From assembly GCF_001447785.1 (NCBI RefSeq), contig NW_015171530.1:186001-250000 (forward strand): DNA of 64,000 nucleotides, given 5' to 3'. The notes beneath the pieces are model-generated. The model saw nothing but the letters and a program-made list of their open reading frames with translations, did no database searches and was not told the origin of the DNA. Positions within the stretch are counted from its first letter, which is position 1; each line of letters begins with the position of its first letter. Shown here in pieces: positions 7,716-57,893 of the stretch. The translations under genes were made by a program, and so were the position numbers. This DNA comes from Gekko japonicus (Eukaryota).

Positions 7716-7997
7716 AGAAGAAGAAGAAGAGATTGGATTTATTCCCCCCCCTTCACTATCCAAAGGAGTCTCAGAGCGGCCTACAAACTCTTTTCCCTTC
7801 CCCTCCCCACAACAGACACCCTGTGAGGTAGGTGGGGCTGAGAGAGCTCTGACAGAAACTGCTCTTTTTCAAGAACAGCTCTTATCAGAACTACGGCTTG
7901 CCCAAGGTCATCCAGCAGGTGCGAGTGGAGGAGTGGGCAATCCAACCTGGTTCTCCCAGATTAGAGTCCGCGCACTTAACCACTACACCAAACTGGC
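7716..7997 (-). mobile_element. tRNA-derived SINE (Squam3-like)
   Basis: Reverse complement of the copies at 31113, 33438 and 57646; tRNA-like head and (CTT)n tail. Confidence 0.75.
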
Positions 7998-19770: not shown

Positions 19771-21199
19771 CTTTCCATGCAAGCCCCAAATTCATAGTAG
19801 AAGAGTTTTCAAATTTCTCAGCACATGAAGATGTGCCCCTCTCCTTTTCTTGGGAAAGAGAAATGCACCTCTGGAATGCATTCATCTCTCACTCCATGCC
19901 TGAACTGCATTTGAGACAGATTACCATGGCTGCAGATCTCCTCCTCCCCCCCTCCCCGGTACAGCCAGATTGCCTAGTATGAAAGGCCCTGCCGTTATTC
20001 ACTAGCCACCCTAACCCTTCCACAGAATCCAGGGGCATCCACAGTCATTTACTCCTCCTTGGTAACTCTGAATTCACTATACTACATTTTGGTCCCAGAG
20101 AATCAGTTTCTGTTTCTCACTGAGCCAAGCCCAGTACAGTGGCTCCAGTCTGAGTTACTGCCCTTTGTAATGTACGTCTGTGTTATAGCTGTCCTTAATG
20201 CCTGTCACTGTTAAGTAAAACCTTCTTTCTGTCATGCAGGAGCTGGAGCAGAGCTGGGCTACAGGCCAAGCCAGGGCTCCAGAGAAGGTGAATTTGGGAC
20301 TGGGGCTTTCCCCTTCTGTCATGTTGTTTTGTGTGTGTTTCTCTCCCAGAAACAGCCAGGCCTTACTGTTGGAAAAATCATGCACCTCCTAATTCAATCT
20401 GTCTGATTTTCTCAACAGCTGCTGTTGAGGAATATACATTGTCCTCTTTCCCATATATAGCTTTGGTGCATGACCCACATACCCCTTTATTCCTTTTCAC
20501 CAAGAATGGTACCTTTAGATTTGATGATTTTCTAAGCCAGTGTCAGAGGGAAAAAGCTCATGGCATTTGGAAAGCCCTAACTACTTTGCCAAATCGTGTA
20601 AAGGTGATCCCTTCTGATATTTTGGATCATGGTTTTAAAATCTTCAGAGGTTGGCAGCACAGAAGTATTTTGTTTAAAACACTTGACAGAATCTTCAGAG
20701 GTTGGCAGCACAGTGACAGAAGTATTTTGTTTAAAACACTTGACAAGAAGATTTTGGCCAGTGAAGGAGGGGATCCTTCTGGGTACACGGCCGTAATTGC
20801 TAGGGTACGATTGATTTTTAATCAGTGTTCCCAGGGGTGGAGAGAAATGGATATGTATTTCCACCTTTAAAGTAATGTTTTTCCTTTTTTTACAATACCA
20901 GCATTCAGTGCTTAGATACTGTGGTGACCTGGTATCTGACATTTTCTTAACGCAGCCCCTAAATGTTAGTTGAGCTGTTTGCCTAGTTTTGTTGTGCTAC
21001 AGGAAGGCAGACTCTAATATGATGGTGATAAATCAGCAACAAAAATGATGCTGTACAGCTTTTCTTGAAGGGGCGGTTCTCTGCCTCATGGGTTTACAGT
21101 CTAAATTTCAAAAAGGGAGGAGGGAAACCTATAATATTGTGTGTGTGTATCTGTTATCAATCCAGATGTTGAGTTCACTCCACAATCCTTCTGCTCTAG

Positions 21200-22039
21200 G
21201 TTCCTGGGAGTCCAACGGCTATTCTGCATCCTCAGAGATCGCCGATGAGCCCAGCGTTCCCTTAAGCCCTTCTAACAGCCTTAACATCCGCAACCTCCAA
21301 TTGTCTGAGCGAGACCCTCCGGTCACCCACCACCCCCACCGCTATCCCCATCGCTTCTACCATGGCCGGCCCTTCCATGCAGCTGCCTACCGCAAGACCT
21401 ACCGAGGCAGCCCCTCTGATCGCAAGGAATGGGGACCCAGCACCAACGGCCACCACTGCGCTCCTGAAAGCATTTCTAATGGGCGGTGGCAGCACCGTCG
21501 CCGTGGCTATTCTGACCCACCGTCTCCATCGTCATCTCCGGAATCGGAACGAGACAGCGCCATCAAAGTCGGCGAGAAGCCTGCCGTTACATCAAATGCC
21601 ACCAATTCAGCCACCGAGGATTCTGGGAAGGAAACATGGTCGCTTTTCCGGCCACTTCCTGCTTTCCCGGTTGATAGCAGCAGCGCCCGGATCATTCCTA
21701 AGATCTCTTATGCTAGCAAGCTGAAAGAGAACTTGGATCAACCAGGGAAAGCCTGCCATGTTCCTGCCTCAGCCGTCCGCACCACCAACAGCCTCCCCAA
21801 CTGTGTCCTGGCGCCACCCCCAAGCAGTCCCCCACCCTCTGACAGCAGCCGGCAGCAGCACCTGGGAGCCATCTTTCAGAATGAGTGGGGCTTGTCCTTT
21901 ATCAATGATCCAGGAGCAGGGCATGGAGGGGGTGGTGGGACTGCACCAGAGAAGGATGTGGAAGATGCAAACACTGGAGCATGCTGGGAGAAAATGGAAG
22001 CCGATGACTGGCAAGCTGCAAGAAATTATCACCTGGAAG
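21200..22039 (+). CDS. NUFIP2-like protein, large central exon
   Basis: 840-nt open exon with NUFIP2 motifs WSLFRPLPAFPVDSSSARIIPKISYASKLKENL and LGAIFQNEWGLSFINDP, ending DWQAARNYHLE; AG/GT bounded. Confidence 0.88.
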
Positions 22040-22724
22040 GTAAGCTGGATGAAAGATCTTGATGTTGCCATCTAGGAGGGGCAGGCCTAGATATATGGTT
22101 TTGAGGGTGGGAGTAGAAAAATGAATGGGGTGTGGGGGAGAGTATGTGGGATTGTAGGGGATATGCAGAGATGCTGGGGGCAGAAATGTTCCAGGGGTCA
22201 GAACGATGGTTGCTGCAATTAAGTGGAAGGGATAATTCTGGTTATGTGTAAGGACATGTAGGGAATAAGGGACCAGTGCTATTCCTCTGTTTGCCTTTCT
22301 CAGCTTTTTCATTGCTTAATATGTGAAAAGGCCTGAGGGTACCTAGGAACTAGCAAGATTGTAGCTTCGGCTTCTGTGGGTTTAGCTAACATGCTACCCC
22401 TCTGAGCTGTATAAAATAGGTTCTTTTTTCTCTAATTCTACAGCTTCCCGTTTTCTGCAGTCAACACAAATTCCCATGCCCTCTTTTAGGCAGGTTGAGT
22501 GAATGGATTTGAAGGACTCCCCTCCCCCCTTGGGGTGCACGGAAATTGGCATCTGAATCCCAGCTCTCAGAACCATTGAAATTTAGGGACTTCATTAGAG
22601 GAGTGAGCTGCCTAAATGTAGCCGAGGAACTAGGTGGGATTGGTTCTGGGACTCACTTTTTGGTACAGGTTAAATTAGTGCCTGGCTTCTAATTTCCTTC
22701 TTTCCTCTCTTCTCCTAATTACAG

Positions 22725-26899: not shown

Positions 26900-27389
26900 T
26901 CTATAAACGGGCATTTTGCCCTCACTGAAAATGGCTCTCAAAGGTTCCCGCCGGTAGCGACCGCGCTATACTTTCCGGAAATCTTCCTCTAGGGCGCCAA
27001 GAAGCTGTTGGGCAGCGCCCGCCCGCGCGCGCCCGCGCTCTATTGAGCGGCCCGCCCGGAAGAAAACCTGAACTCCGGGGGCGGGGGCAGGAAAAAGAGA
27101 GGCAGAGGGCGCGGCGCGCATGTGCAGTAGAGAATAGTAGCGACGGAGAACGCGCCTGCGTAATTCCGACGCGACCCTTGACCGAGCGGGTTGAGTCTGA
27201 CGCGCGGGGGCGTTGTTTGCGCACGCGCACCGTGCTTGGTGGAACAGCCTCCCCAACGAGGAAAGTAAATGGATCGGCGCAGCTTCTTCTTAAAGGGGCA
27301 GTGCCTTAAAGGGGGGGGGGGGGGGGGGCGGTGTCTCCCCAGAGGAGGAAGGCGCCGTAGCCACCAAGCTGCAGGGTGAAAGAGCAGAG
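26900..27389 (+). promoter_or_regulatory. CpG-island promoter and probable non-coding exon 1 for TMEM219 and the Harbinger-derived gene
   Basis: Very CpG-rich, GC boxes, ETS CCGGAA sites, NRF1-like GCGCATGTGC, donor AG|GTAAGC after 27389; no other promoter-like CpG island before the TMEM219 coding exons. Confidence 0.7.
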
Positions 27390-28817
27390 GTAAGCTGGCG
27401 TGACGCCCCTTTTCCTGCCTTGTTTTTGGCTTCTTGCTCTATATAGCCTTTTCTCTCCTTTATCCTTGTCTTGGGTATTTTACCCGACTTAGAGAGCTGC
27501 AACCAACGCACGTTTTGGAGTAAGCGCGTCACTAAACATAAAAGTGTCTATTTCGAAGTAAACGTGCACGGGAATGGACTGACGTTCTCCACCCCCACCC
27601 ACCCCACGTCGTACCAAATGCAAAGCTACTTTTTCTTAACAATTGGGGGCGGAATTCTCAAGGGCTTTAGTTTTGAAGTATGTAGCCCGCGGAAGAAAAT
27701 AGTCAGAAGTTGCCTCGTAGAGAGCCGAGCTATTGGCCTAGTTAGCCTACTCTGATCTTCTCTGACAAACAGTAACTTTGCCCAATCGCTGGTCTGGAGT
27801 TTCCCCCCAGCCTTTTCCTGAGATGCTTTTTAGCCGGATAGTCTCAGGAATTGAACCGTATATAGAATGGATTACTGTTATCTCGTCTGGATCTTACCGA
27901 GGCATGTGCCACGATGGCCCGGTCACCTTCTTCCTGGAACGTCAGCAGCCTACTAGCCAACCTAGGCTGGTTAAATAGTGCACCTGGCTGCCTGTTTATT
28001 AAGGGCCAAAGAAGTCCAGGAGCGTCCCCAAGGTGCACTTTCTAGCATTTATATATGCCAGCCTAGCAGTTAGAAAGCGAGAAATTGCAAGTAGATAAAT
28101 AGGTACCGCTTCGGTGGGAAGGGAACAGCGTTCCATGCGCCTTTACCTGCAGTGTTTTATATACATGATTGTGTTGTAACCCTTACAACAGCTCTCAAAG
28201 ATGGGCTAGCCTTATTTTCCATGGGAAGAATTTGAGGCTGAGGGAGTGTGTCTTGCCTAAAGCCAGCGGGTGTGTTCATGTCAGAGGTGAGATTTGAACT
28301 AAGTCCTAACGGATCATAGCTCCACTCTCTTGGCTGCCGCACTACTCCAACTCATGTTTAGAGGTCTTTATACGTTTCCCCATTTCTAGAGTTTGTGGTT
28401 TATTATTTACAAGTTAATAATTTTTTTAAATAACAACCAGCATTTTGTCCCTGGAAGAGAAGCAATATGCCTACATTCATATAATTCACCCACCCTCCCT
28501 TTTTATCATTGAATCCCAAGCATTTTTTTTGCGAGAAACCTGCTTGCCGATTCTAATCTTGTTTTTTGTAACCCCTGGAAAGCACACCATTTTGGAAGTC
28601 ATTCGCTTGCCTGAGCCCTGTGTCCTTTAGAGCTGGGAGGGAAATCAAAAGTGAAGTCCAAACCCACAACCCTGTTTGTCACCGTGGCCCGCCATTTGTC
28701 TGTGTGCATGCCAGCTCACCTTTCCATCCTGGATCCTGTTTCGAATGCCAGAACTGAATTTAAAAGTTTATTGTGACACCAGAATGCATTTGAGCACATG
28801 CAGATTGTCCATGCCTA

Positions 28818-29050
28818 TAGTAAAGGTAAAGGTTCTCTTGCTCGAAAGCCAGTCAAATCCGACTCCAGGGTTGCGGTGCTCATCTCCGTTTCAAAGCCGA
28901 AGAGCCAGTGCTGTCCAAAGATGTTTCCGTGGTCATGTGGCCGGCATGACTAAACACCGAGGCGCACGGAACACTGTTTCCTTCCCACTGAAGTGGTACC
29001 TATTTATCTACTTGCAATTTCTTGCTTTCGAACTGCTAGGTTGGCAAGAG
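28818..29050 (-). mobile_element. Sauria SINE
   Basis: (AAAGGT)n tail, GTGGTCATGTGGCCGGCATGAC...GTGGTACCTATTTATCTACTTGCA; related copies at ~28065-28150 (+) and 58136-58405 (-). Confidence 0.8.
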
Positions 29051-30258
29051 GTCCATGCCTATAGTCAGCCCCATACTCATCTGAAACTTAGGGGGCTTGG
29101 CTTCAGGTCAGAATGCAGCTGTTCCGGGCAGCCGAATGCCAGTATCTCTGGTTCTATAGTTTAATTATCTGTCCTCTGGCTTCCTCTCTTTCTGTCCCCC
29201 AAAATGCAACATCAGCCTCTCTTCTTGCATGCTCCCCGTGCATGACCACACTGGGAGGATCAGAAGACAAAAGTGTTTCTTAGAGAACCCGCACAGAAGT
29301 GCTGACCTCTTGTTAAAACTGGTACCCCTTGTTGTTAGTAAGGTCATTTCCCTGGCTGTGTGGTTTGATGTCCAACCAGAAGCAAGTACCACTGAGCTCT
29401 GAAGAACTGGTTTCCAAGTAAGGATACTGAGGAGTGTATCCCTAAGGTATTAAGAACCTCTGATAAACTGTGACTTATGAGGAAAAGAAATAACCATGTA
29501 GAGGGTGGGGATTTGAGTCACTTCTCCCCCCCCCCCAAGTCAGGAAATACGGAGGGGAAAAAATCAATGGTAACGTTGGTATGGATAGTGAAGGAGCACC
29601 TGAGTAGAATTATCTGGGTTACTAGGTCAAAAGAACTGCTTTGCTTCCTCGGGCTTTAACCACGGAGAATACATTAGCATTTTGCTCATTTCATGGAAAA
29701 GAGGATTTAAAAATTTCAGTCAGCTGTGATTGTAGTACAGTCTACTGCTGGTTTCCCTAATCTGAATGGTTCAGGGAGCGGAATAGCATGGAAGGGACTT
29801 GAGAGGTTTCACTGAGACCCAGCTGTGCGGTGAATGAAGGCCTGAGAGAACTGGCGTGACTTAAATTGAGCCCAGACAGGGGTTTGGTTTCAAGGCTCTC
29901 TGGGCATCTACAGAGTGCCTTTCCTTCACCACTGAGTAATTACAGCCGAACTCAGTATACCTGAGATTTGGACTTCAGGTTGCGGAGGATGGGTCGCAGA
30001 GAGGCTTGACCATCTGCAGCTGTGCACAGAGGACTGAGGTTGTAGGACAGGAGGTTGTACAGTGGAATGTACCATTTCAGAGTGTAGCTGGTGGATCCTT
30101 TTTTTGAATTTCCCCACTGTTAAAAAAAGGACATCAGGAGAGAAGTTTGGTCCCACCTGCTTCTTGCTGTGCTACTGTTCCACCGGTGGAATGTTTAAAA
30201 ATAACCCACGAGGGAGCATTCAAAATGGTTTTCTCTACCCAGCCTCTGAAATGGTACA

Positions 30259-30789
30259 ACATACAAGAATACTGCTATAGTGCAACCAATACAAAATACT
30301 GTATAACCAATGACAGAATAATCATTCCATAATATTTAGTCTTTTTCTTTTTTTCAATGTAGACGCCGCGAGATGAACATGCAAGACGTCATGAAGAAGT
30401 GAAGGACGAACTTCCCTGGAGTAACCGTTTCGTTTCGGGCCCGGTTTAATACATAGGCTATGTGCCGGTTATAAGCTATTCTGAAGCTGTTAGGAATCAG
30501 AGAGGTCCTTTTGGGAAGTTGTATGAGTATGATGAAGCAGAACTGATGTTTGTATGAGAAAGAAATATCGAAACGAAACGGTTACTCCAGGGAAGTTCGT
30601 CCTTCACTTCTTCATGACGTCTTGCATGTTCATCTCGCGGCGTCTACATTGAAAAAAGAAAAAGATTAAATATTATGGAATGATTATTCTGTCATTGGTT
30701 ATACAGTATTTTGTATTGGTTGCACTATTGCAGTATTCTTGTATGTAGCACGATTGTCATACTGCTTGTCATACCCCCTTGTTTTTTCA
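30259..30789. mobile_element. Young fold-back insertion (long inverted repeat) with 14-bp TSD
   Basis: Arms 30259-30437 and 30569-30746 are reverse complements (about 3 differences); TCTGAAATGGTACA is duplicated at 30245-30258 and 30790-30803. Confidence 0.85.
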
Positions 30790-31112
30790 TCTGAAATGGT
30801 ACAGTCTACAACCTCAGGATTCTACCCCCTCATTCCAATGTGTGTGTAGAACAGCCTTTGGAGTTGAAGGACCAGTTGGCAGGCTGTGTGGAAACTTTAC
30901 AGATGCTAGCTTGAGAAGGTGGAGGCTGGGTTTGAGGAGATGGATGGGGTCTGACACCAGGAGAATAATCAGGAAGTAGTAAAGGTGTGCAGCTGATCAT
31001 TTGGCTTGTGGGATACAAGAAGGAAGCTTGGATGGAGTGACTGGGTAGAGTCACAACATGTAACCCCTTGAAAGCTTAAGGATTTTGAAACGGTATGGTT
31101 AGGTGTTCTGCT

Positions 31113-31375
31113 GAGCCAGATTGGTGTAGTGGTTAAGAGTGGCAGACTCTAATCTGGAGAACGGGGGTTCATTCCCCATTCCTCCTCATGTAGCTGCTGG
31201 TGTGACCTTGGGTCAGTCACAGTTCTCTCAGAGCTGTTCTCGAGTAGTTCTCTCAGAGCTCTCTCGGCCCCACCCACCTCACCGTGTGTCTGTTGTGGGG
31301 AGGCGAGGGGAAAGGAGATTGTAAGCGGCCCCGAGTGAAGTGTTGGGTATAAATCCAATCTCTCCTCCTCCTCCT
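31113..31375 (+). mobile_element. tRNA-derived SINE (Squam3-like)
   Basis: GAGCCAGATTGGTGTAGTGGTTAAG...TATAAATCCAATCTCTCC. Confidence 0.75.
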
Positions 31376-31663
31376 TGAGTGTGGTGGAACCATCCCCTTC
31401 ACCTCGGTGAAAGGAGGAAATGCTCTTTGTCATTGACATGTAAACGTGATTCAATTAGTGAGCAAAAACCCAATTACAATTTATTGCCCTTCAGTCCAAC
31501 AGTGCCTTTGCAGTCGGAAGTGCAAGGACTGGTCAGCCCTGCCCAGTGATGTGATCCCTGCCTTGGCCAGTGGCTTCAGGAGGGGACAGGGTTTTCTCTT
31601 GCAGCACAGCGTGACATCACTTCCTCCCGAGTCGGCAGTGAACTTCAGAAAAAGGGAAGAGAA

Positions 31664-33019
31664 ATGGAGCAGGAGTGTCTGGCTCTCGTCGCGGCCTGTG
31701 TCCAAACCTCCCAGTTGCTAGTGCAGCAATGGATGCTCAACAGGCGCACCGTGGTTTTTGCCATAGCGAGGATTCTGCAGCGGAGGCGCTTCCGCAGATC
31801 CGCTGCCGTCCTGAGGCGCATCCTCTCCGCCAGCGTCCGCCGCAAGAGAGCCCTGCTGCGGCTTCATCGCAACGCTATCGTCTCCGTGGTCACGATGGTG
31901 TACTCCTCGTCCCCCGCGCTCCACTATGAGCACGAGCTGATGGCCTTGTCGGAGCGGTCACACTGGATGCTTCCAAGATGCAGCGAGTGGTGGGAGCGGA
32001 TGATCTCTTCGGAGCAGGACGACAAGTGTTGGATTTCCTTGTTCAGAATGTCACGCTCCACCCTCATGTATATCGCGGAGGAGCTGCGCCCGGCCCTGCA
32101 GCGGCGAGACACCGGCATGAGGTCCCACATCCCCGTCGAGAAAAGGGTCGCCATGACTATCTGGAAGCTAGCTCACCACGACAGCTACAAGACCGTCTCT
32201 GAGCTCTTCGGGGTCGGGATTTCGTCGGCTTGCTCCATCTTCGAAGAGGTGTGCGAGGAAATAAATAGCCGGCTCCTGGCCCAAACCATTCAGCTGGGCG
32301 ATCCTCGGAAAATCATGGAAGGTTTCCAGGAGATGGGCTTCCCCAACTGCCTTGGCGCGATCGATGCCGTGCACATCTCCATCTTGTGCCCCCCATTCTC
32401 TGCGGACTCCTACATTAACTGTAAGGGCTTCTACTCGATGGTCCTGCAGGCGCTGGTGGACAGCAGATCCCGTTTCACTGACATCTACGTCGGTTTTCCC
32501 GAGCGGTCCCACGACTCCCGCATCCTGCACAACTCGCCCTTCTTCAACAGTATGGACGATGGCGCCTTTGGGCCGCAGACCCCAACAGTTTTGGAAGGCG
32601 TTTCGATGACCCCCGTCATCATTGGGGACGCCGCCTACCCGCTCCGCCCCTGGCTGATGAAGCCGTACCCTACTCCAAAAACTGTGGCACAAGAGCATTT
32701 CAATGAGAGGCTAGCCAAGTGCCGGGCGTGCGTGGAGAGAGCGTTCGCCGTCCTGAGAGCTCGCTGGAGGTGCTTGCAGATGCGACTGGACGTGCGGGAG
32801 AAGCTCATTCCTGTTGTCATAGCGACTTGCTGCATCCTGCATAACATATGCGAAATAAAAGGGGATGAGTTGCTGGAGCCGCTGGAAAGTCCTCCGGCGG
32901 CTGAAAGTCAGAACGCTTCAGCCAGGCCAAGGGTGCCGCTATCAGAGGCTGGGCTGACCAAGAGAGCATGCCAGATAAGGGCTGCTTATTGTTCTTATTT
33001 TGAAAAGAATCCTCTGTAG
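31664..33019 (+). CDS. Intact PIF/Harbinger transposase-derived protein (HARBI1/ALP1-like, DDE_Tnp_4 family), 451 aa
   Basis: Uninterrupted ORF with FRMSRSTL, EKRVAMTIWKLA..helix-turn-helix..LFGVGISSA, CLGAIDAVHI, NCKGFYSMVLQALVD, HDSRIL, IGDAAYPLRPWLMKPY, CVERAFAVLRARWRCL and CCILHNICE; AATAAA at 33120. Confidence 0.9.
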   Translation: MEQECLALVAACVQTSQLLVQQWMLNRRTVVFAIARILQRRRFRRSAAVLRRILSASVRRKRALLRLHRNAIVSVVTMVYSSSPALHYEHELMALSERSHWMLPRCSEWWERMISSEQDDKCWISLFRMSRSTLMYIAEELRPALQRRDTGMRSHIPVEKRVAMTIWKLAHHDSYKTVSELFGVGISSACSIFEEVCEEINSRLLAQTIQLGDPRKIMEGFQEMGFPNCLGAIDAVHISILCPPFSADSYINCKGFYSMVLQALVDSRSRFTDIYVGFPERSHDSRILHNSPFFNSMDDGAFGPQTPTVLEGVSMTPVIIGDAAYPLRPWLMKPYPTPKTVAQEHFNERLAKCRACVERAFAVLRARWRCLQMRLDVREKLIPVVIATCCILHNICEIKGDELLEPLESPPAAESQNASARPRVPLSEAGLTKRACQIRAAYCSYFEKNPL

Positions 33020-33437
33020 AAGGGAAAGTGGGGGGGGACGGGACAGGTTCATTTTCCCATGTGATTTCCCTGGGGTGCGAATGCCAACATCCTTAGTGTG
33101 TGTACCCAAGGTTATGACAAATAAAAAGGATATGATTCTGAACAAATTTTCACTTTTAGTTTTTTTAACCAGTGATCTTTTAGGACCATCGCTGTGACAA
33201 AAGTGATTTTCTCTTTTTTAAAATAAACTGCTCCCCCTCGGAATGCGGGATGGGACAGGAACCAGTGACAACAGTGCAAAGTGGAGAAAGCCAGCAGGGG
33301 AAGTCAGGAGTGTGGTTTCTTGCAGATAGGTCCAGCTTTCACTTGCATGAACCAGTGTTATGGAGCCACACCTAACCATGTTTGGTGTCGCGTGGACGAG
33401 ACTTGTGCTTGAAGACGTCCACACCACATCTTCCCCA

Positions 33438-33717
33438 GAGCCAGTTTGGTGTAGTGGAGTAGTGGACTCTAATCTGGGAGAACCGGGTTTGATTCCCCAC
33501 TCCTCCACTTGCACCTGCTGATGTGACCTTGGGTCCTTTGCAAGCTCTGGCACAGCTGTCCTTGAAAAAGGGCAGTTTGTGTCAGAGTTCTCTCGGCCCC
33601 ACCCACCTCACAGGGTGTCTGTTGTGGGGAGGGGAAGGGAAAGGAGTTTGTAAGCCGCTCTGAAACTCCAAGTGAAGGGCAGGGTATAAATCCAATCTCT
33701 TCCTCTTCTTCTTCTTC
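33438..33717 (+). mobile_element. tRNA-derived SINE (Squam3-like)
   Basis: Near-identical to the 7716-7997 and 57646 copies; (CTT)n tail. Confidence 0.75.
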
Positions 33718-34109
33718 ATGTGTTTTCTGATTCACTTAGTTATCTTGTCTTTAGCATAGGCCAGGAGGCCCCAAGTTTGGTGAACCTGTGGGCACAATGG
33801 AATTTTTGAAAATGGGTAAGTGGGGTGCCACCATCAAATGACTGCCATGCGTAGGGAGCAACACTAACCACAGTATGGCTGCCACGGAGGCTGGGGCCAG
33901 TCACAAAATGCTGGGAGGTTCCAAGTCAAGGATCTTCCTACAATGGAGCGAACCGTTTCCAAATGGTGCTCCCTGAAGACACAAAGGTGATGCCTCTTGG
34001 GCTTCCCTGGAGCATCTCCTGCTCCAATGAGATGAAGGAAGGCAAGCTCTGGCTCTTTGGTATCAGGGAAGAGATGCTTTGGCAAAAAAGCAGAGGATAC
34101 CATGATGGT

Positions 34110-35030
34110 GTCCTGGATGGCATACATCCGAGAGTTCTGAAAGAACTCAAATGTGAACTTGTGGATCTCCTTACAAAAATATGTAATCTTTCATTAAAAT
34201 CTGCCTCCATTCCTGAAGACTGGAAGGTAGCTAATGTCACTCCCATCTTTAAAAAGGGTTCCAGAGGAGATCTGGGAAATTACAGGCCAGTCAGTCTGAC
34301 GTCGATACCGGGTAAGTTGGTGGAAACTGTTATTAAGGAAAGAATTAGTAGGCACATTGATGAACAAAAACTATTGAGGCAGACTCAGCATGGGTTCTGT
34401 AAGGGAAGATCTTGTCTCATTAACCTGTTAGTGTTTTTTGAGGGAGTGAACAAACATGTGGACAAGGGGGACCCAATAGATGTTGTTTACCTTGACTTCC
34501 AGAAAGCTCTTGATAAAGTTCCTCATTAAAGGCTCCTAAGTAAGCTCAATAGTCCCGGGATAAAAGGAGAAGTCCTCTTGTGGATCAAAAACTGGCTAAT
34601 TAATAGGAAACAGAGAATGAGTATAAATGGGAAATTTTCTCAGTGGAGGGTGGTAAGCAGTGGGGTACCACAGGGATCAGTACTTGGTCTGATGCTTTTT
34701 AACTTGTTTATTAATGATTTGGATTTGGGAGTAAGCAGTGAAGTGGCTGAATTTGCAGATGACACAAAGTTGTTCAGGATGGTGAGAACCAGGGAGGATT
34801 GTGAGGCACTCCAAAGGGATCTGTCGAGGATGGGCGAGTGGGCATCAACGTGGCAAATGGGGTTCAGTGTGGTCAAGTGTAAAGTGATACACATTGGAGC
34901 CAAAAATCCTAAATACAAATACACATCGATGGGGTCCAAAATGGCAGTGACTGACCAAGAGAGAGATCTTGGAGTAGTAGTAGATAACTCAATGAAAATG
35001 TCTAGATAGTGTGCAACTACAATAAAAAAT
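34110..35030 (+). mobile_element. CR1 LINE ORF2 (reverse transcriptase) fragment
   Basis: DGIHPRVLKEL, PEDWKVANVTPIFKKG, NYRPVSLTS, QHGF, YLDFQKA, GVPQGSVLG, FADDTKL; in-frame stops at 34527 and 35007. Confidence 0.92.
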
Positions 35031-35035
35031 ACTGA

Positions 35036-35580
35036 TAGACCCATCCTCCATGAATCTGTCTAATCTTTTAAAGCTGTCTTATGAATGTGGCCATCACAAC
35101 ATCCTCACAACATTCCACATTATGACTTGTGTAAAGTAGTACTTCCTTTTGTCTGACCTGAATCTACTGCCCATCAGTTTTGTTGCATGTCCTCGAGTGC
35201 TAGTATTTTGGGAATGGGAGGAAAATTTCTTTCTCCCCTCATTCCATCCCATGCATAATTTTATAAACCTCTATGTTATCACTTAGTTGTCTCTTTTCTA
35301 AACTGAAAAGTCCCGGACTCTTCAGCATTTCCTCCTAAGGCAGATGGTCCAACCCCCAAATCATCTCGGTTACCGTCTTTTGTACTTTTTCCAGCTCTGT
35401 GATGTCGAGAGATACAGTGACCAGAACTGCACACAGTCTTCCAAATGAGGCAGCCCCATACAGCATTATACACAGAGCATTATAATATCAGCTGTTTTAT
35501 TTTCAGTCCCTTTCCTAATCCTCACAAAATCCCCTTTTCACTGCTGCAGCACACTGGGTTGACACTTTCATTGAGCTACC
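35036..35580 (-). mobile_element. Degenerate CR1 3' fragment, opposite orientation
   Basis: CCAGAACTGCACACAGT and TTTTCTAAACTGAAAAGTCCC, typical of the reverse strand of the CR1 ORF2 C-terminus. Confidence 0.7.
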
Positions 35581-36544
35581 TACTACTATTCCCCCCCCCC
35601 ACAGCAAAAAAGATGGTTCCCCATGTATAATTCTTTCAGATCTTAAGACCACCTTGTTCCACTGGCTGAGTTTACTCTCTCTGGTGTAGTTCTCCTGTTC
35701 TGACTTGGATTCTCCTTTCATCTGTAGGGGCAGGGTGCTGTTCTAAACTTATCTCAAAGGAAGCAATCAATGTCTGTTGGTTATCTGGTTCCAGGTTTGG
35801 GGTAATCCTTGCACCCCAAGCTGAGTTTTTGGACCAAATGGCTGTAATGCTGGATTTTTCCATTTAATGTTATTCATTTACATTATTTATAGTCATCTGC
35901 TTTTCTCACAGGGGACTCAATGTGGATTACACAGAATAAATCAATACAATTAACAGAGTGAGACATCTGATAGAAACTGCAATAGGTTTTAACTTGTAGA
36001 AATGTGGAAACCAACCAGAGGTGAAGCACAGAATTGGCTTCTGTTTCAGAAACACATAAAGGGTGTTTTGTTTTTAAATTATTTTCTGCAGAGGCCTTAA
36101 TTGGATGATCTCCAGAATCTTAATTTCCTTTACCATGCATCCAAGAGACTCAAATATGTGGAATGAAATAATACCAAAATACATTCATTCCATGTCATGA
36201 TTTCTCAGATTTGATTCTTTTGAGGGGCGCAGTCCTCTTGTGGGACTATCACCTGGGAATTCCATAGGAAAGCACGTGCTTGAGAGCACTCCCTATAAGA
36301 ATCTCCACGCATCTATATATTCCAAATAAGGCAACACAATATCTTCCACATGCATTTTGACACTGGGGTGCTTTGAAATAAATCACCTGTATTCTAAGTA
36401 CAGTATAATCCTCGGTGAAGACTACACTGCATTATCCCCCCAATTGTTCATTAACACTAAATCCATTTTGAAGAACTAACTTTACATTTTGAGCACTGGA
36501 AGTTAGCAGATCACACAAACTGGTTTGAACACTGTACCAGTAAG

Positions 36545-36751
36545 CAATGCTCCCTCTAAGCTGTGGGGTCCTGTGAGCAAAAATTCTACCTTGTGAGCTA
36601 CTGGTATTAAAGTGGTGAGCAAGCGATTCGGCTGCTGCACAAATTCGTTTTGCTCTGGAGCCCTCCTGCCTGAGTGGAGATGAAAATCTGTGAGCTGGAG
36701 GCTAAAAAACCATGAGCTGACTCACACTAACTCAGTTTAGAGGGAACACTG
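36545..36751 (+). mobile_element. hAT-type MITE, copy 4
   Basis: Same TIRs; TSD CCAGTAAG/CCGGTAAG. Confidence 0.82.
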
Positions 36752-38086
36752 CCGGTAAGGACAGATTTGCCGCTTGTTCTTATGTGTTGACTGAGGTTTT
36801 CGGAATCAAATCAGTTGTCCCGTGCTTCTTGTTACTTACACAGTTAGGAACCTCTACATAACAATATGGAATTTGAAAGAAACAGCTCAGATTATGGGCA
36901 ATTGAGACAGCAGGTTGCTTCATCTGTGACACTCAATATGGCAATTTCATCCTTCACATCTCCTAAAAGACAGAAATGCATGCTCTGCTCTCTCTCGGTT
37001 GCTGCTGCAGTTTAGTCAAATAAGAGAAGCCTCATAAACTGGACGCACAACAGACAATTCAGAAAATTATACGGCATTTTGTTTGATTTCTTATTCCATA
37101 ATTTCGTGGGGCTTTGCTATTTTAGTGCTTCTGATCTCCTGTGAGACTGTTTCTTTCTGAATACTTAAGATTTGTGTTTGAAGTAAAATAGGCGTGCACA
37201 GACTTGCTCTGTGATATTACAGCAGATCATTTGTGAATCTCTACCACTGTCAAGAACCCGGGGCCCTGTACAGAATGGGCCCTCTGCAGGGGGAAAAGGC
37301 AGGATAGAAGCCTCTCAATAAAATCCTCTTTCTAGCCACACCGTACCATTGTGGCCCTCTCTTTTATGTCCCCTAACAGGTGCCTGATCAAACAAAGTTC
37401 TACTAATGCGATTTCCCCCCATGTCATTTTCAAAGTACGTCTGTCTCCTCCAAATGCTCCCCTAATGCTCTAATAGAGGGGCCCCCACAAAGTGTTTTAG
37501 GAAGTGGGTGGGGCCAGGTAGGCTTTAGCCCAGCAAGGCATCTGATTGACTATTAGAAATTTGATTGGCTGGGCAGATTTCTTCTATGTAAATATTACTT
37601 TGTCCCCCATAAGTACCCTTTCCAAACCCCATGCCTTTTCTTCCCCCCTGCATGTGCTCCGAAATCACTTACCAAGGTTCCCCACGAGGCAAAGCAAGGG
37701 GTAGTTTTTCCCTATTGTTTTACCCTGTTAGCTCATGCAGCTTGCTAGTAGAGACTTGGGTGAAACCCAGCAGCAGTTTCCCTCAGCTGCGGGGACCCAA
37801 ATCCGCATTGGCTGGTTACTTATAGAGACCCTTTTTGAGGACTCCCAGAATCCCCCCCCCAGTCCCCCCCCCAGTGTACCACAGAGAGCCTTGATCGGGA
37901 TCACCACAAGTGCTTATGGACTGTGCCATACAAGTGCAAAGGAGAGGGAGTGCATATTACCAACCTTTCCTTTTTCGTGGTTTCTGGTTTGGGTCGTCTC
38001 ACTCACAAAGGGCTCACCTTCCACCAGTGCTGGGTGAGCAGCGCTCTGACAACACACCCTTCTCACCCTCACCCTTAGGGCCGGCC

Positions 38087-38245
38087 ATGGTCATCTGCTC
38101 CCTGCTGGTCTCCCTGCGTATTTGTCTGGAGCGACACCCACCTCTGGTCACCTTCTTCTTCTGTCTCCTTTCGCTGGCCGTTGCCTTTGGCAGTTTTGCC
38201 GCTTACCTCCAGTCGCATGATGTTCCAAACCCTGATGTCAAAGAG
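38087..38245 (+). CDS. TMEM219: TMEM219 (IGFBP-3 receptor), coding exon 1
   Basis: gccATGg, MVICSLLVSLRICLERHPPLVTFFFCLLSLAVAFGSF...NPDVKE; exons of 159+220+109+112+129 nt give 242 aa; position upstream of TAOK2 fits synteny. Confidence 0.87.
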
Positions 38246-39396
38246 GTGAGCCAGGGATGAAGATCTGAAGGACTTTGGAATGAATTGGGCTTGAGGGTAA
38301 AGGGAAGCATCAAGAGGTGTGGAGGGAAAGACAAGTGTCTAGCCTTCATCTTCTCCCACTCAAGCTTGTCAATAGTTTAGGTTAATTAAGGGAGATGATT
38401 AAACCACTTGATTAAACAGCCATGCCGAAGCTTTAGGCTTACTGGCTGACTACTCAGATGGAACACATAGAGTCTCCCTAAATGCCACAGGCTGGGCTAA
38501 GGAAAAGTAGTTTAAAAAGAAAAAAAGCCATATACAGTGTTCGTACCAGAAGGCACTAGTCTATGCTGAGTTTGCCGGATTTGGGAGGATGCACTGATCT
38601 GATCTTGAGGAGGGCAGTTCCATGCAATCTCTCCTTATATATAATTGAATAGTGGGTGCCAAAGTTCTAATTCTAAAATGCACTCCCTTAGTGTATGGCT
38701 GATGGCGCTGCTGCTCAGCATATATCGCCACCAATCAGAAGGCAAAGCCCGGGTCCCGCCCACACCACAACTGCTGCGACAACCTGGTCTTTTGCATATG
38801 GAAGCTGATTGGACTTCACTCCATTCCACACCTCAAACTCCCCCCCCCCCTCCGCAAGGCAGTTGGAATGTCAGTTGCATATGGAACCTGCTGTATTCCG
38901 GTGATGTGCAGGTCCAAGGTTCATGTTTTAAAAGCAGACTGACACTGTTTGCCCAAAGCCAGAGCACTCTCCCAGAGCCTCTTTCTAGATCTCGTTGTAT
39001 TTATTTCCACAACGGGCCTTATTTCTAGTTTTCATATAATTGTGTACCAAACTACTGGGGGGGGGGTGTTATTTTTACAAATCACTGTACAAACTGCTTT
39101 CCCTTTCAAAGGAAACTGACCTTGGAGAGCTCTAAATGTTCTCCCACTTGGAGGAAGGAGAGCAGAACGACATCAGCTTTAGCAATCTAAGCTCTTTAAA
39201 CCCATGGGTTCAGCTTTTATAGCCTTTTCTTGATGGTTGCCAGCTTTCAGTTTTTACAGTTAAGACCAAAGGAGTGGGGTGGGTTAGGAAAGAGCACTTG
39301 AAACATGGAAAAGTTTTTATTTAAAAATGCAGGCACAAAGGGAGTGGGGGGGAGGAACTGAGAGGCAGTTTCCAACCCTTTCCCCTCATCTTTAAG

Positions 39397-39616
39397 GACT
39401 GGAACTCTCTCCTAACATCTCTGGCACATCTGATGTTCTGTGTCCCAAACAAGACCCATGAAGACACCTCAACGCCACCTCCCTCTGCAGCTGCTGAATT
39501 CCATACGACAGTCTCTGTCCTGGTTGGCCTCACCTTTGAGCTCCAGAATGGCACAGACCCTCCCAATGGCACACACCTGGCGTTGACTGTCACCGGGAGA
39601 GAGCTGGGTCTCAAGG
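39397..39616 (+). CDS. TMEM219: TMEM219 coding exon 2
   Basis: DWNSLLTSLAHLMFC...TVTGRELGLKG; AG/GT bounded. Confidence 0.87.
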
Positions 39617-39726
39617 GTGAGTGACCTCCCACTTTTAACAGACTGCAAACTGTCCCAGTTCCTTCTCTTTCTTTCCGTTTCCCCTGCCCCCCACTTGACC
39701 CTCCCATCTGCCCATTCCACCCACAG

Positions 39727-39835
39727 GCCCAGATACCCAGGAGCCAATCCACCTTGTGATAGCCATCATGAATTCACTATCCCACGAGAGCTGCCTTAGT
39801 ATCATTGCTCCCTCTTCCCTTCTCCCCAAGACCAG
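39727..39835 (+). CDS. TMEM219: TMEM219 coding exon 3
   Basis: PDTQEPIHLVI...CLSIIAPSSLLPKT; phase consistent. Confidence 0.82.
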
Positions 39836-39913
39836 GTAAGCCTAAGAACAAGAAGCCAGCATTGCAGAGTGCTCTCGGCCCACTGATGCAACAAATCCCA
39901 TCTTCTTCCCCAG

Positions 39914-40025
39914 GAAGCCACCTGAATGTGTGATGCGGGAGCGAAGGGTGCATCCAGAAGAGCCAGGCCTTTGTTACCAATCGCATTACCAGGATGATCC
40001 TGCTCTGTCCAGCATGCTGGACCAG
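39914..40025 (+). CDS. TMEM219: TMEM219 coding exon 4
   Basis: KPPECV...LCYQSHYQDDPALSSMLDQ; phase consistent. Confidence 0.82.
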
Positions 40026-40125
40026 GTGAGAGATGATGTACTAGGGTGCATTGGGAGTCAGAACCTCATCCTCCTCGAAGGATGCAGAAGAGGACTATTC
40101 ACTGTTGCACTCCTTTCACTCCCAG

Positions 40126-40254
40126 GCAGATCGTGCCCTCTGCAGCCAGCGTCTCCTGCTCACCACTGCTTTCCTTCTCTGCCTCTGTGCCATGCTGTGT
40201 TGCGTGGCTGGCGTGTGCTATCCTGCCCCCAGAGACAAGCGGGGGCAAATCTAG
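40126..40254 (+). CDS. TMEM219: TMEM219 coding exon 5 (second TM helix, stop)
   Basis: ADRALCSQRLLLTTAFLLCLCAMLCCVAGVCYP...*; AATAAA at 40482. Confidence 0.87.
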   Translation, partial: ADRALCSQRLLLTTAFLLCLCAMLCCVAGVCYPAPRDKRGQI

Positions 40255-57645: not shown

Positions 57646-57893
57646 CCCGTTGGTGTCGTGGTTAAGTGTGCGGACTCTAATCTGGGAGAACCGGGTTTGA
57701 TTCCCCACTCAGTCACTCGCAGCTGCTGGATGACCTTGGGCAAGTCGTAGTTCTGTCAGAGCTGTCCTTGAAAGAGCAGTTTCTGTCAGAGCTCTCTCAG
57801 CCCCACCTACCTCACAGGGTGTCTGTTGTGGGGTTTGTAAGCCGCTCTGAGACTCCAAATGAAGGGCGGGGTATAAATCCAATCTTCTTCTTC
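57646..57893 (+). mobile_element. tRNA-derived SINE (Squam3-like)
   Basis: Similar to 33438-33717. Confidence 0.75.

What the first reader, a model, noticed from the sequence alone, without database searches (positions are those of the whole stretch)
31604..33125. Intact Harbinger transposase gene nested in TMEM219 intron 1, probably domesticated and sharing its promoter
Seen: a 451-aa ORF with all three catalytic acidic positions in context (GAID, GDAAY, VERAF), a splice acceptor just upstream (TTTTCTCTTGCAG at 31604) and AATAAA about 100 nt after the stop. I found no terminal inverted repeats and no Myb/SANT partner ORF, which autonomous Harbingers need. The nearest promoter and donor are at 26900-27389, also the only obvious promoter for TMEM219 (first coding exon at 38079). 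The neighbouring LINE ORFs are all broken, while this ORF is not. Known: Harbinger transposases have been domesticated repeatedly (vertebrate HARBI1 with NAIF1; plant ALP1 and HDP1 in chromatin complexes). This sequence and locus do not match canonical HARBI1 as I recall it. Inference: an independent domestication, expressed as an alternative terminal exon from the TMEM219 promoter, giving two unrelated proteins from one promoter.
Basis: partly seen in the sequence, partly recalled or inferred. Interest (0 to 1): 0.8.

Follow-up and report, generated by a model that had tools for sequence, protein, structure and literature searches.

The report
Squamate domesticated Harbinger transposase inside TMEM219
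A transposon-derived enzyme gene sits intact in the first intron of this gecko's TMEM219 gene, is spliced onto TMEM219's own first exon, and is 93-98% identical from geckos to snakes, so it is a real, old, unstudied host gene and not a mobile element.

Summary
A 451-codon ORF (31664-33019, +) encodes a PIF/Harbinger DDE_Tnp_4 transposase (Pfam 3e-29) with D234, D322 and E358 intact. It has no terminal inverted repeats, no Myb/SANT ORF beside it and no second copy in the window.

RNA-seq reads join the non-coding exon-1 donor (27389) to an acceptor at 31494/31495 (7 reads, 7 starts), not 31604/5. In the same run, 9 reads join that donor to TMEM219's first coding exon (38079). One promoter therefore yields two unrelated proteins.

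Fifteen listed members of a 44-member protein cluster, from geckos, lacertids, an amphisbaenian, a cordylid, iguanians and snakes, are all 451 aa with no indels and 93-98% identical. Residues 49-205 vary at 4 of 157 columns. NCBI names eight of them isoform X1 or isoform 1 of the IGFBP-3 receptor (TMEM219). No protein outside squamates exceeds 52% identity.

It is not HARBI1. It is one of several squamate Harbinger-derived genes, which Novick et al. 2011 noted generically for Anolis. The architecture parallels ZBED6 in ZC3H11A.

I class it as a new, unstudied member of a known kind. The scan had not found this gene before.

The parts
26950..27400 (+). CpG-island promoter region shared by both mRNAs
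   Evidence: GC 0.65 and CpG o/e 1.05, against 0.41/0.61 upstream. The transcription start was not mapped.
27180..27389 (+). Shared non-coding exon 1. The 5' end is undetermined (27180 is only where my laid stretch began). The donor is CAGAG|GTAAGC at 27389/27390.
   Evidence: RNA depth in X20-X22, plus splice joints and loose ends leaving 27389.
31493..31494 (+). AG of the acceptor actually used by the transposase exon
   Evidence: The joint was reported as 27387->31493, GT..AG, cut +2, which equals 27389|31495. X21 has 7 reads with 7 starts and X22 has 1 read.
31592..31604 (+).
   Evidence: It is present in the sequence, but no joint is listed there.
31495..33145 (+). Terminal exon carrying the whole CDS. 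The 3' end is approximate: either after AATAAA at 33120, or near 33276 after AATAAA at 33222.
   Evidence: X21 depth is about 7-45 across the exon and 0 in intron bins 27780-27979 and 29180-30379. An X1 contig runs from 31362 to about 33276.
31549..31554 (+). Minimal uORF (ATG TGA) in the 5'UTR. An in-frame TGA at 31547 closes the main frame upstream.
31664..33019 (+). CDS of the 451-aa Harbinger-derived protein, with start context AGAGAAATGG
31667..31909 (+). N-terminal Arg-rich long helix (residues 2-82)
   Evidence: The AF2 model has pLDDT about 76-87 here, and structural matches are only generic coiled coils.
31808..32278 (+). Residues 49-205: near-invariant block that contains most of the helix-turn-helix region
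   Evidence: 4 of 157 columns vary among 16 sequences. HTH_Tnp_4 matches weakly at 157-204.
32348..32860 (+). RNase H-like DDE catalytic domain (residues 229-399) with D234 (32363-32365), D322 (32627-32629) and E358 (32735-32737)
   Evidence: Pfam DDE_Tnp_4. The triad is invariant in the orthologues. Structural matches are piggyBac Z 9.4, Tn5 Z 9.2 and ISCth4 Z 7.5.
32939..33007 (+). Conserved C-terminal helix (residues 426-448)
33120..33125 (+). First AATAAA (a second lies at 33222-33227)
38079..38245 (+). TMEM219 first coding exon (ATG at 38087), the alternative partner of the same exon-1 donor
   Evidence: tblastn with P0110. The loose-end consensus of 9 X21 reads at 27390 matches 38080 onward.
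39382..40251 (+). Remaining TMEM219 coding exons (approximate tblastn limits)
31113..31375 (.). SINE-like repeat immediately upstream of the exon
   Evidence: 77% identical to 33438-33711, with further copies at 7716-7997 and 57650-57893. Read depth is very high.
33438..33712 (.). SINE-like repeat downstream of the exon
33963..35009 (+). Broken LINE reverse transcriptase (two ORF pieces)
   Evidence: RVT_1 at 2e-8 and 1e-12 in separate ORFs.

Best explanation
This is a host gene derived from a PIF/Harbinger transposase. It was fixed in intron 1 of TMEM219 before the crown squamates diverged and has been kept under very strong purifying selection since. It has no promoter exon of its own in the reads seen. 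The TMEM219 CpG-island promoter makes a non-coding exon 1, whose donor (27389) splices either to a terminal exon (31495 to about 33145) holding the whole 451-codon ORF, or to TMEM219's first coding exon (38079). One transcription unit therefore yields two unrelated proteins. Those steps are shown. The rest is inferred. The protein keeps a long N-terminal helix, a helix-turn-helix region, a complete DDE RNase H-like domain and a conserved C-terminal helix. The triad and the DNA-binding part have not changed across squamates. I therefore think it most likely still binds DNA and coordinates metal as a nuclease-type enzyme. It would work in the nucleus like vertebrate HARBI1, probably recruited by a Myb/SANT (trihelix) partner through its N-terminal region, rather than as a catalytically dead scaffold like plant ALP1. 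My confidence is about 0.9 for gene status and transcript architecture, and about 0.4 for the HARBI1-like mode of action.
For: The ORF and its domains are confirmed. The best hit, P0001 (a snake), is 94% identical over 100% of the length and sits in a 44-member 90% cluster; the next best hits are 52% or lower. Listed members come from Gekkota, Lacertoidea, Scincoidea, Iguania and Serpentes, all 451 aa, and eight are named IGFBP-3 receptor (TMEM219) isoform X1 or isoform 1 by NCBI. The alignment has 97% mean column identity with no gaps, and D234, D322 and E358 are invariant. Only 70 of 451 columns vary, and 4 of 157 in residues 49-205. Between the window and Phrynosoma, the nested ORF fragment is 96% identical while the TMEM219 exons are 53-77%. 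The gene evolves about 3 times slower than its paralogue F2 on the same species pairs: 94-97% against 84-88%. Snakes, elapids and geckos group as expected inside the clade, which indicates vertical descent. RNA reads show splice joint 27389|31495 (7+1 reads), 9 reads joining 27389 to 38079, exon depth of 15-45 against 0 in the intron, and a fixed synonymous variant at 32384. There are no TIRs, no second copy in the window and no Myb/SANT ORF. The AF2 model has pLDDT 85, and its nearest solved structures are DDE transposases.
Against: Orthologous position in other squamates rests on NCBI gene names and on one chimeric Phrynosoma model (P0110), not on inspected loci. There is no evidence for the protein itself (proteomics or Ribo-seq). 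Expression is clear in one of three RNA runs and low in the other two, and the libraries are unstranded. The TSS and polyA site are not mapped. One X1 contig continues unspliced upstream of the acceptor to 31362, so some transcripts are unspliced or start elsewhere. No partner protein, DNA target or activity was tested. Only 15 of the 44 cluster members were visible, so presence in tuatara is unknown.
Confidence: 0.85

Rival explanations
1. It is an autonomous or recently active Harbinger transposon copy that happens to lie in the intron.
For: The DDE triad and the full-length ORF are intact. A multicopy, near-identical 320-aa Harbinger family exists in another gecko, Eublepharis, and is the sister branch of this gene.
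Against: There are no TIRs or TSD, no Myb-like second ORF and a single copy in the window. One protein per species is 93-98% identical across squamates, with a clade topology like the species tree. The nearest other proteins are 52% identical or less.
Confidence: 0.01
2. It is a conserved gene that is really driven by its own promoter just upstream of the exon, and the exon-1 junction is a minor by-product of lying inside TMEM219.
For: An X1 contig runs unspliced from the ORF upstream to 31362, beyond the acceptor. Some NCBI annotations list it as a separate LOC rather than a TMEM219 isoform.
Against: Seven independent junction reads from exon 1 compare with 9 for TMEM219 in the same run. Intron bins have zero depth in X21. 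No CpG island lies upstream of 31495: 30500-31400 has GC 0.46 and CpG o/e 0.36, and a SINE sits there. Eight species' gene models share the TMEM219 gene.
Confidence: 0.08
3. It is a catalytically irrelevant chromatin or transcription adaptor (ALP1/ALP2 or HDP1 style), with only its DNA- or protein-binding surfaces under selection.
For: The most conserved part is the N-terminal and HTH block (residues 49-205; 4 of 157 variable), which is more conserved than the catalytic domain (24 of 162 variable). Most studied domesticated Harbinger transposases act in chromatin complexes (PMC4671723, PMC7282668, PMC5339849).
Against: D234, D322 and E358 and their motif contexts are invariant in every orthologue across the crown squamates. 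That is unexpected if catalysis or metal binding were dispensable.
Confidence: 0.35
4. It is a neutral relic ORF, exonised by chance and without function.
For: None beyond its transposon origin.
Against: A length of 451 codons is preserved without any indel or stop in at least 15 species. The total amino-acid tree length is only 0.30, while the flanking sequence is full of SINE and LINE debris.
Confidence: 0.01

Closest known systems
HARBI1 (vertebrate Harbinger-derived nuclease; partner NAIF1)
   Same: It is a transposase-derived, single-copy host gene with a DDE_Tnp_4 domain, a retained DDE triad and no TIRs. It is the only previously characterised transposase-derived Harbinger gene of vertebrates (PMC9392472, citing Kapitonov & Jurka 2004 and Sinzelle 2008).
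   Different: HARBI1 dates to the base of jawed vertebrates and is present from sharks to mammals (PMC9392472). This gene is found only in squamates. It is 451 aa with a long N-terminal helix, lies inside TMEM219 and has no known partner. Public names such as 'putative nuclease HARBI1' on its orthologues are automatic labels.
ZBED6 in intron 1 of ZC3H11A (placental mammals)
   Same: ZBED6 is an intronless ORF of a domesticated DNA transposase in intron 1 of an unrelated host gene. It uses the same promoter, is single-copy at the same site in the whole clade, and has a DNA-binding part near 100% identical (PMC2780926). This is the closest architectural parallel.
   Different: ZBED6 is hAT-derived and has lost catalysis, and it is expressed by intron retention in a long ZC3H11A splice variant. 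Here the transposase is PIF/Harbinger, keeps its DDE triad, and is expressed by splicing exon 1 to a dedicated terminal exon.
The five TIR-less Harbinger ORFs of Anolis carolinensis (Novick et al. 2011, PMC3014272)
   Same: That paper reports ORFs of 442-466 aa that keep the Harbinger motifs, lack TIRs and TSDs, and are judged 'very likely' domesticated. The present gene (451 aa, with an Anolis sagrei orthologue, P0130) is probably one of them.
   Different: That report covers one genome and gives no loci, orthologues, expression or host-gene relationship. The TMEM219 nesting, the shared exon and the pan-squamate conservation are not described there.
'Apparently domesticated' Harbinger anchoring the squamate harbiTRIM locus (Boys, Quinlan & Elde 2025 preprint, PMC12262214)
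   Same: It is an intact, transcribed Harbinger that is conserved in squamates and about 200 Myr old.
   Different: That element lies in a TRIM/butyrophilin/PRY-SPRY cluster. I found no such domain in this 64-kb window, so it is probably another of the squamate Harbinger genes, for example family F2. The text held does not say which one, so identity cannot be decided.
Plant ALP1/ALP2 and HDP1, and Drosophila DPLG genes
   Same: These are recurrent domestications of PIF/Harbinger transposases into host genes (PMC4671723, PMC7282668, PMC5339849, PMC9710019).
   Different: They are independent events in other kingdoms or phyla and act as chromatin-complex subunits. 'ALP1-like' names on reptile proteins are automatic labels and do not indicate orthology (in the tree, the one plant and three arthropod sequences sampled fall outside the reptile clade).

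Membership tests
PIF/Harbinger transposase superfamily (protein homology) | DDE_Tnp_4 catalytic domain above the Pfam gathering score | tested here: met
   PF13359 at 3e-29 and 102 bits against a cutoff of 24.8, covering residues 233-394 and profile positions 1-158 of 158.
PIF/Harbinger transposase superfamily (protein homology) | Catalytic D, D, E residues in their conserved motifs | tested here: met
   D234, D322 and E358 are present. These columns hold D in 73/75, D in 67/75 and E in 61/75 sequences of the family alignment, and are invariant in the 16-sequence orthologue alignment.
PIF/Harbinger transposase superfamily (protein homology) | Helix-turn-helix DNA-binding region N-terminal to the catalytic domain | tested here: inconclusive
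   HTH_Tnp_4 scores only E 0.0012 and 18.9 bits, below the cutoff of 27. The AF2 model shows a confident helical region at 108-208.
Autonomous Harbinger transposon (mobile element) | Terminal inverted repeats with a 3-bp TWA target duplication | tested here: not met
   Only short chance inverted pairs were found, none bracketing the ORF sensibly. SINE insertions flank the exon.
Autonomous Harbinger transposon (mobile element) | A second ORF encoding a Myb/SANT-like DNA-binding protein | tested here: not met
   No Myb/SANT Pfam hit in any intron-1 ORF of 70 aa or more.
Autonomous Harbinger transposon (mobile element) | Multiple similar copies in the genome | tested here: inconclusive
   There is one copy in the 64-kb window. 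Each species contributes one protein on one contig to the 90% cluster, and its other Harbinger proteins are 52% identical or less. A whole-genome DNA search was not possible.
Domesticated (exapted) transposase gene | Orthologues at the same locus across a clade | tested here: inconclusive
   This is indirect. Eight species' NCBI models name the protein a TMEM219 (IGFBP-3 receptor) isoform, and the Phrynosoma model P0110 fuses it to TMEM219 exons. The loci themselves could not be fetched.
Domesticated (exapted) transposase gene | Purifying selection on the coding sequence | tested here: met
   At the protein level the lowest pairwise identity is 92.9%, there are no indels, and the tree length is 0.30 substitutions per site over 15 species. 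The host TMEM219 is far more diverged in the same species pair. Codon-level dN/dS was not tested.
Domesticated (exapted) transposase gene | Transcription as a processed host mRNA | tested here: met
   A GT..AG junction joins 27389 to 31495 and the exon is covered in RNA-seq.
HARBI1 orthologue | Present across jawed vertebrates including mammals and birds (PMC9392472) | tested here: not met
   The 120 best hits contain no mammal or bird protein. The N-terminal and fragment searches return only squamate sequences.
HARBI1 orthologue | Groups with HARBI1 in a phylogeny | not tested
   No authentic HARBI1 sequence was delivered by any tool, and I did not type one from memory.
ZBED6-type nested gene sharing the host promoter | Single-exon transposase ORF in intron 1 of an unrelated host gene, on the same strand | tested here: met
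   The ORF at 31664-33019 lies between exon 1 (ending at 27389) and TMEM219 exon 2 (38079), all on the + strand.
ZBED6-type nested gene sharing the host promoter | Both mRNAs start from the host's first exon | tested here: met
   In the same RNA run, 7 reads run from exon 1 to the ORF exon and 9 from exon 1 to the TMEM219 exon. The mechanism differs from ZBED6: alternative splicing here, intron retention there (PMC2780926).

The most novel reading that the evidence does not exclude
This is a squamate-specific Harbinger enzyme that is still catalytically active. It would be a host-controlled DDE nuclease or recombinase with its own DNA targets and a Myb/SANT partner, transcriptionally coupled to the IGFBP-3 receptor gene, and indispensable in lizards and snakes. 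That would be a lineage-restricted counterpart of HARBI1 whose near-frozen sequence makes its biochemical role directly testable.
Probability: 0.2. Interest if true: 0.8.

Novelty: new member of a known kind. Interest (0 to 1): 0.6.

Why it matters
Only one transposase-derived Harbinger gene, HARBI1, has been characterised in vertebrates, and its function is still unknown. This is a second gene of that kind, restricted to one lineage. It is more strongly conserved than its host gene or its paralogue, keeps its catalytic triad, and has a clean natural expression design: one promoter with a splice choice between two unrelated proteins. That makes it a tractable model for how a transposase becomes an essential gene, and for what Harbinger-derived nucleases do, now that lizards such as Anolis sagrei and geckos can be genome-edited. 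On the practical side, public annotation mislabels the protein as an IGFBP-3 receptor isoform, as HARBI1 or as ALP1-like. This can corrupt TMEM219 orthology and isoform analyses in reptiles.

Tried and rejected
I therefore have no orthologue DNA, no inspected synteny and no dN/dS.
- **Phmmer against PDB sequences** found nothing relevant. **Foldseek against the PDB** gave only weak hits at E >= 0.01, though all the top ones were DDE transposases or integrases. VIA-align was clearer.
- **The ESM Atlas** returned only generic DDE_Tnp_4 clusters.
- **Literature searches** for TMEM219 plus transposase gave only unrelated papers.
- **No supplement** is held for the harbiTRIM preprint. I could not decide whether its Harbinger is this gene.
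- **A second listing of cluster members** showed the same 15 of 44 members. Tuatara membership stays unknown.
- **The search of protein representatives** (the big search) was not used. It collapses everything above 50% identity and carries no names, so it cannot show presence or absence in a taxon.
- **No joined mRNA model:** The CDS lies in one exon, so nothing depended on it.
- **Rejected readings:** an active transposon, a neutral relic and HARBI1 orthology.
Full report
**What is in the sequence**

- The + strand carries an uninterrupted ORF at 31664-33019 encoding 451 aa.
- Pfam assigns residues 233-394 to DDE_Tnp_4, the PIF/Harbinger transposase catalytic domain, at E 3e-29 over the full profile. 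A weak, sub-threshold HTH_Tnp_4 match lies at 157-204.
- The three acidic residues sit in the canonical contexts GAID (D234), IGDAAY (D322) and CVERAF (E358). In a 75-sequence family alignment these columns hold D, D and E in 73, 67 and 61 sequences.
- The start codon has a strong context (AGAGAAATGG), and an in-frame TGA lies at 31547. AATAAA signals lie at 33120 and 33222.
- The ORF is GC-rich (0.58; GC3 0.74) against flanks of about 0.46.
- No terminal inverted repeats bracket it.
- Intron-1 ORFs of 70 aa or more, apart from the frames overlapping the ORF exon, give no Myb/SANT hit.
- The block 31495-33200 has no other copy in the window. It is hemmed in by SINE-like repeats at 31113-31375 and 33438-33712, and by a reverse transcriptase broken into two ORFs at 33963-35009.

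**Transcript structure**

I laid three RNA-seq runs of the same species, plus one set of contigs, on 27180-33179.

- In run X21 the ORF exon is covered at about 7-45x, while intron bins such as 27780-27979 and 29180-30379 have zero depth.
- A GT..AG junction joins 27389 to 31495. It is supported by 7 reads with 7 different starts in X21 and by 1 read in X22.
- The acceptor in use is therefore TTGCCCTTCAG|T at 31494/31495.
- In the same run, 9 reads that end at the exon-1 donor continue into sequence that matches the window from 38080 on. That is TMEM219's first coding exon (AG at 38077-38078, ATG at 38087).

The non-coding exon 1 lies in a CpG island at 26950-27400 (GC 0.65, CpG o/e 1.05). It is thus spliced either to the transposase exon or to TMEM219, at similar frequency in that sample.

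The libraries are unstranded, and the GT..AG orientation gives the strand. The TSS and the polyA site were not resolved. One contig of run X1 runs unspliced from about 33276 back to 31362.

**Conservation**

- The word-based protein search returned a king cobra protein at 94% identity over 100% of the length. It represents a 90%-identity cluster of 44 sequences. The next hits drop to 52% or less.
- The 15 visible cluster members come from:
  - geckos (Eublepharis, Heteronotia, and the window's own protein);
  - lacertids;
  - the amphisbaenian Rhineura;
  - the cordylid Hemicordylus;
  - iguanians (Anolis sagrei, Pogona);
  - seven snakes.
- All 15 are exactly 451 aa.
- Their alignment has no gap, 97% mean column identity and a lowest pairwise identity of 92.9%.
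- Variation is concentrated in residues 1-48, the linker 206-232 and a disordered stretch around 410-418. Residues 49-205 change at only 4 of 157 columns.
- The total amino-acid tree length over 15 species is 0.30 substitutions per site.

Two internal controls show how unusual this is.

- Between the window and Phrynosoma, the nested ORF fragment is 96% identical while the TMEM219 exons are 53-77% identical.
- On the same species pairs, the paralogous squamate Harbinger gene F2 is 84-88% identical against 94-97% for this gene.

Within the clade, snakes, elapids, vipers and geckos group as in the species tree, which fits vertical inheritance. Searches restricted to the near-invariant N-terminal part, and a fragment-sized search, returned only squamate sequences.

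**Locus conservation**

The indirect evidence is consistent.

- NCBI names the 451-aa protein 'insulin-like growth factor-binding protein 3 receptor isoform X1' (or 'isoform 1') in Notechis, Vipera, Podarcis, Crotalus, Candoia, Pogona, Heteronotia and Rhineura. This means its models share a gene with TMEM219.
- An independent Phrynosoma annotation fuses part of the ORF to TMEM219 exons.

**Relatives**

A maximum-likelihood tree places the gene in a well-supported sauropsid clade that contains:

- a multicopy turtle family;
- family F2, a second squamate-wide conserved gene of 468-520 aa;
- an Anolis/Varanus pair;
- as its sister, on a long branch, a 320-aa family present as near-identical copies at about twenty loci in Eublepharis. 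This is what a mobile or recently mobile Harbinger looks like.

The nested gene thus derives from a reptile Harbinger lineage and is clearly not HARBI1. HARBI1 is shared by all jawed vertebrates (PMC9392472).

Whether the conserved squamate genes reflect separate domestications, or one domestication followed by duplication, cannot be told from this tree.

**Structure and likely mechanism**

An AlphaFold2 model built on 75 sequences has mean pLDDT 85. It shows:

- an 80-residue Arg-rich N-terminal helix;
- a helical region at 108-208;
- an alpha/beta catalytic domain at 229-399;
- a disordered loop at 409-427;
- a conserved C-terminal helix.

The catalytic region aligns best to the piggyBac, Tn5, Tn4430 and ISCth4 transposases and to retroviral integrases (Z 7-9.4). 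The N-terminal helix matches only generic coiled coils.

The DNA-binding part and the triad are both frozen. I therefore infer a DNA-binding protein that still needs its metal-binding active site. It would act like HARBI1, which is imported and targeted by the Myb-like NAIF1 (PMC9392472, citing Sinzelle 2008), rather than like the plant ALP1-type scaffolds. This step is inference, and nothing here tests activity, partner or target.

**Prior knowledge and novelty**

- Novick et al. 2011 (PMC3014272) reported five TIR-less Harbinger ORFs of 442-466 aa in Anolis carolinensis and judged them domesticated. This gene is probably one of them.
- A 2025 preprint (PMC12262214) mentions an 'apparently domesticated', transcribed Harbinger about 200 Myr old at the squamate harbiTRIM locus. 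The window holds no TRIM or PRY-SPRY ORF, so that is probably a different family member, but the text does not allow a decision.
- The architecture closely parallels ZBED6 in intron 1 of ZC3H11A, which has a common promoter, is single-copy and has a near-invariant DNA-binding domain (PMC2780926). Here the ORF is reached by splicing rather than by intron retention.
- I found no paper linking TMEM219 to a transposase.

The gene is thus auto-annotated and generically foreshadowed, but it has not been described or studied. I class it as a new member of a known kind. Its interest is above average because of the extreme conservation, the intact catalytic triad and the directly demonstrated two-proteins-from-one-promoter design.

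**Limits**

- No dN/dS and no inspected synteny.
- No genome-wide copy count.
- No evidence for the protein itself.
- TSS and 3' end unmapped.
- Status in tuatara unknown.

Noticed in passing
proteins P0002, P0005-P0013, P0135-P0144 (not in the window): A second squamate-wide conserved Harbinger-derived gene ('F2', 468-520 aa). It is 81-92% identical among Varanus, Pogona, geckos, a snake, Anolis and Rhineura, and 43-46% identical to the TMEM219-nested gene. It may be the Harbinger of the harbiTRIM locus.
   Followed up: partly
proteins P0014, P0145-P0152 (Eublepharis macularius): About twenty loci on several chromosomes encode near-identical 320-aa Harbinger ORFs, so this is a multicopy, TE-like family. 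In the tree it is the long-branch sister of the nested gene (99% SH-aLRT).
   Followed up: partly
proteins P0054 (Paroedura, 559 aa) and P0064 (Heteronotia, 588 aa): Gecko proteins combine a KRAB domain (PF01352) with DDE_Tnp_4. They are candidate host-transposase fusion genes.
   Followed up: no
window 30577-30708: One contig of run X1 differs from the genome at 17 or more positions, every one of them A>G on the + strand, and X20 reads agree at 30686. This looks like ADAR hyper-editing of TMEM219 intron-1 pre-mRNA.
   Followed up: no
window ~27307-27330: A run of more than 20 G (about 23 by my reading) lies inside the shared non-coding exon 1, just upstream of the donor. It could form a G-quadruplex in the 5'UTR of both mRNAs.
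   Followed up: no
window 28780-29179 and 31113-31375, 33438-33712, 7716-7997, 57650-57893: These are highly expressed or abundant repeat families, with read depth in the hundreds to 10^5. The last four are copies of one SINE-like element, 75-83% identical to each other.
   Followed up: partly
window 21088-22059: A 324-aa ORF with a NUFIP2 domain (8.6e-28). This confirms the neighbouring NUFIP2-like gene noted earlier by the scan.
   Followed up: partly
proteins P0027 and P0090 (Carettochelys insculpta): Turtle gene models named HAO2 isoform X5 and GLCCI1 isoform X4 contain Harbinger transposase domains. They are probably intronic TE copies merged into host gene models, and show how such 'isoform' names arise.
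   Followed up: no
window 32384: All 46 X21 reads carry C where the assembly has T. This is a synonymous change in Leu241, and it was the only difference inside the ORF among the 40 best-supported rows shown (52 further rows were not shown).
   Followed up: yes
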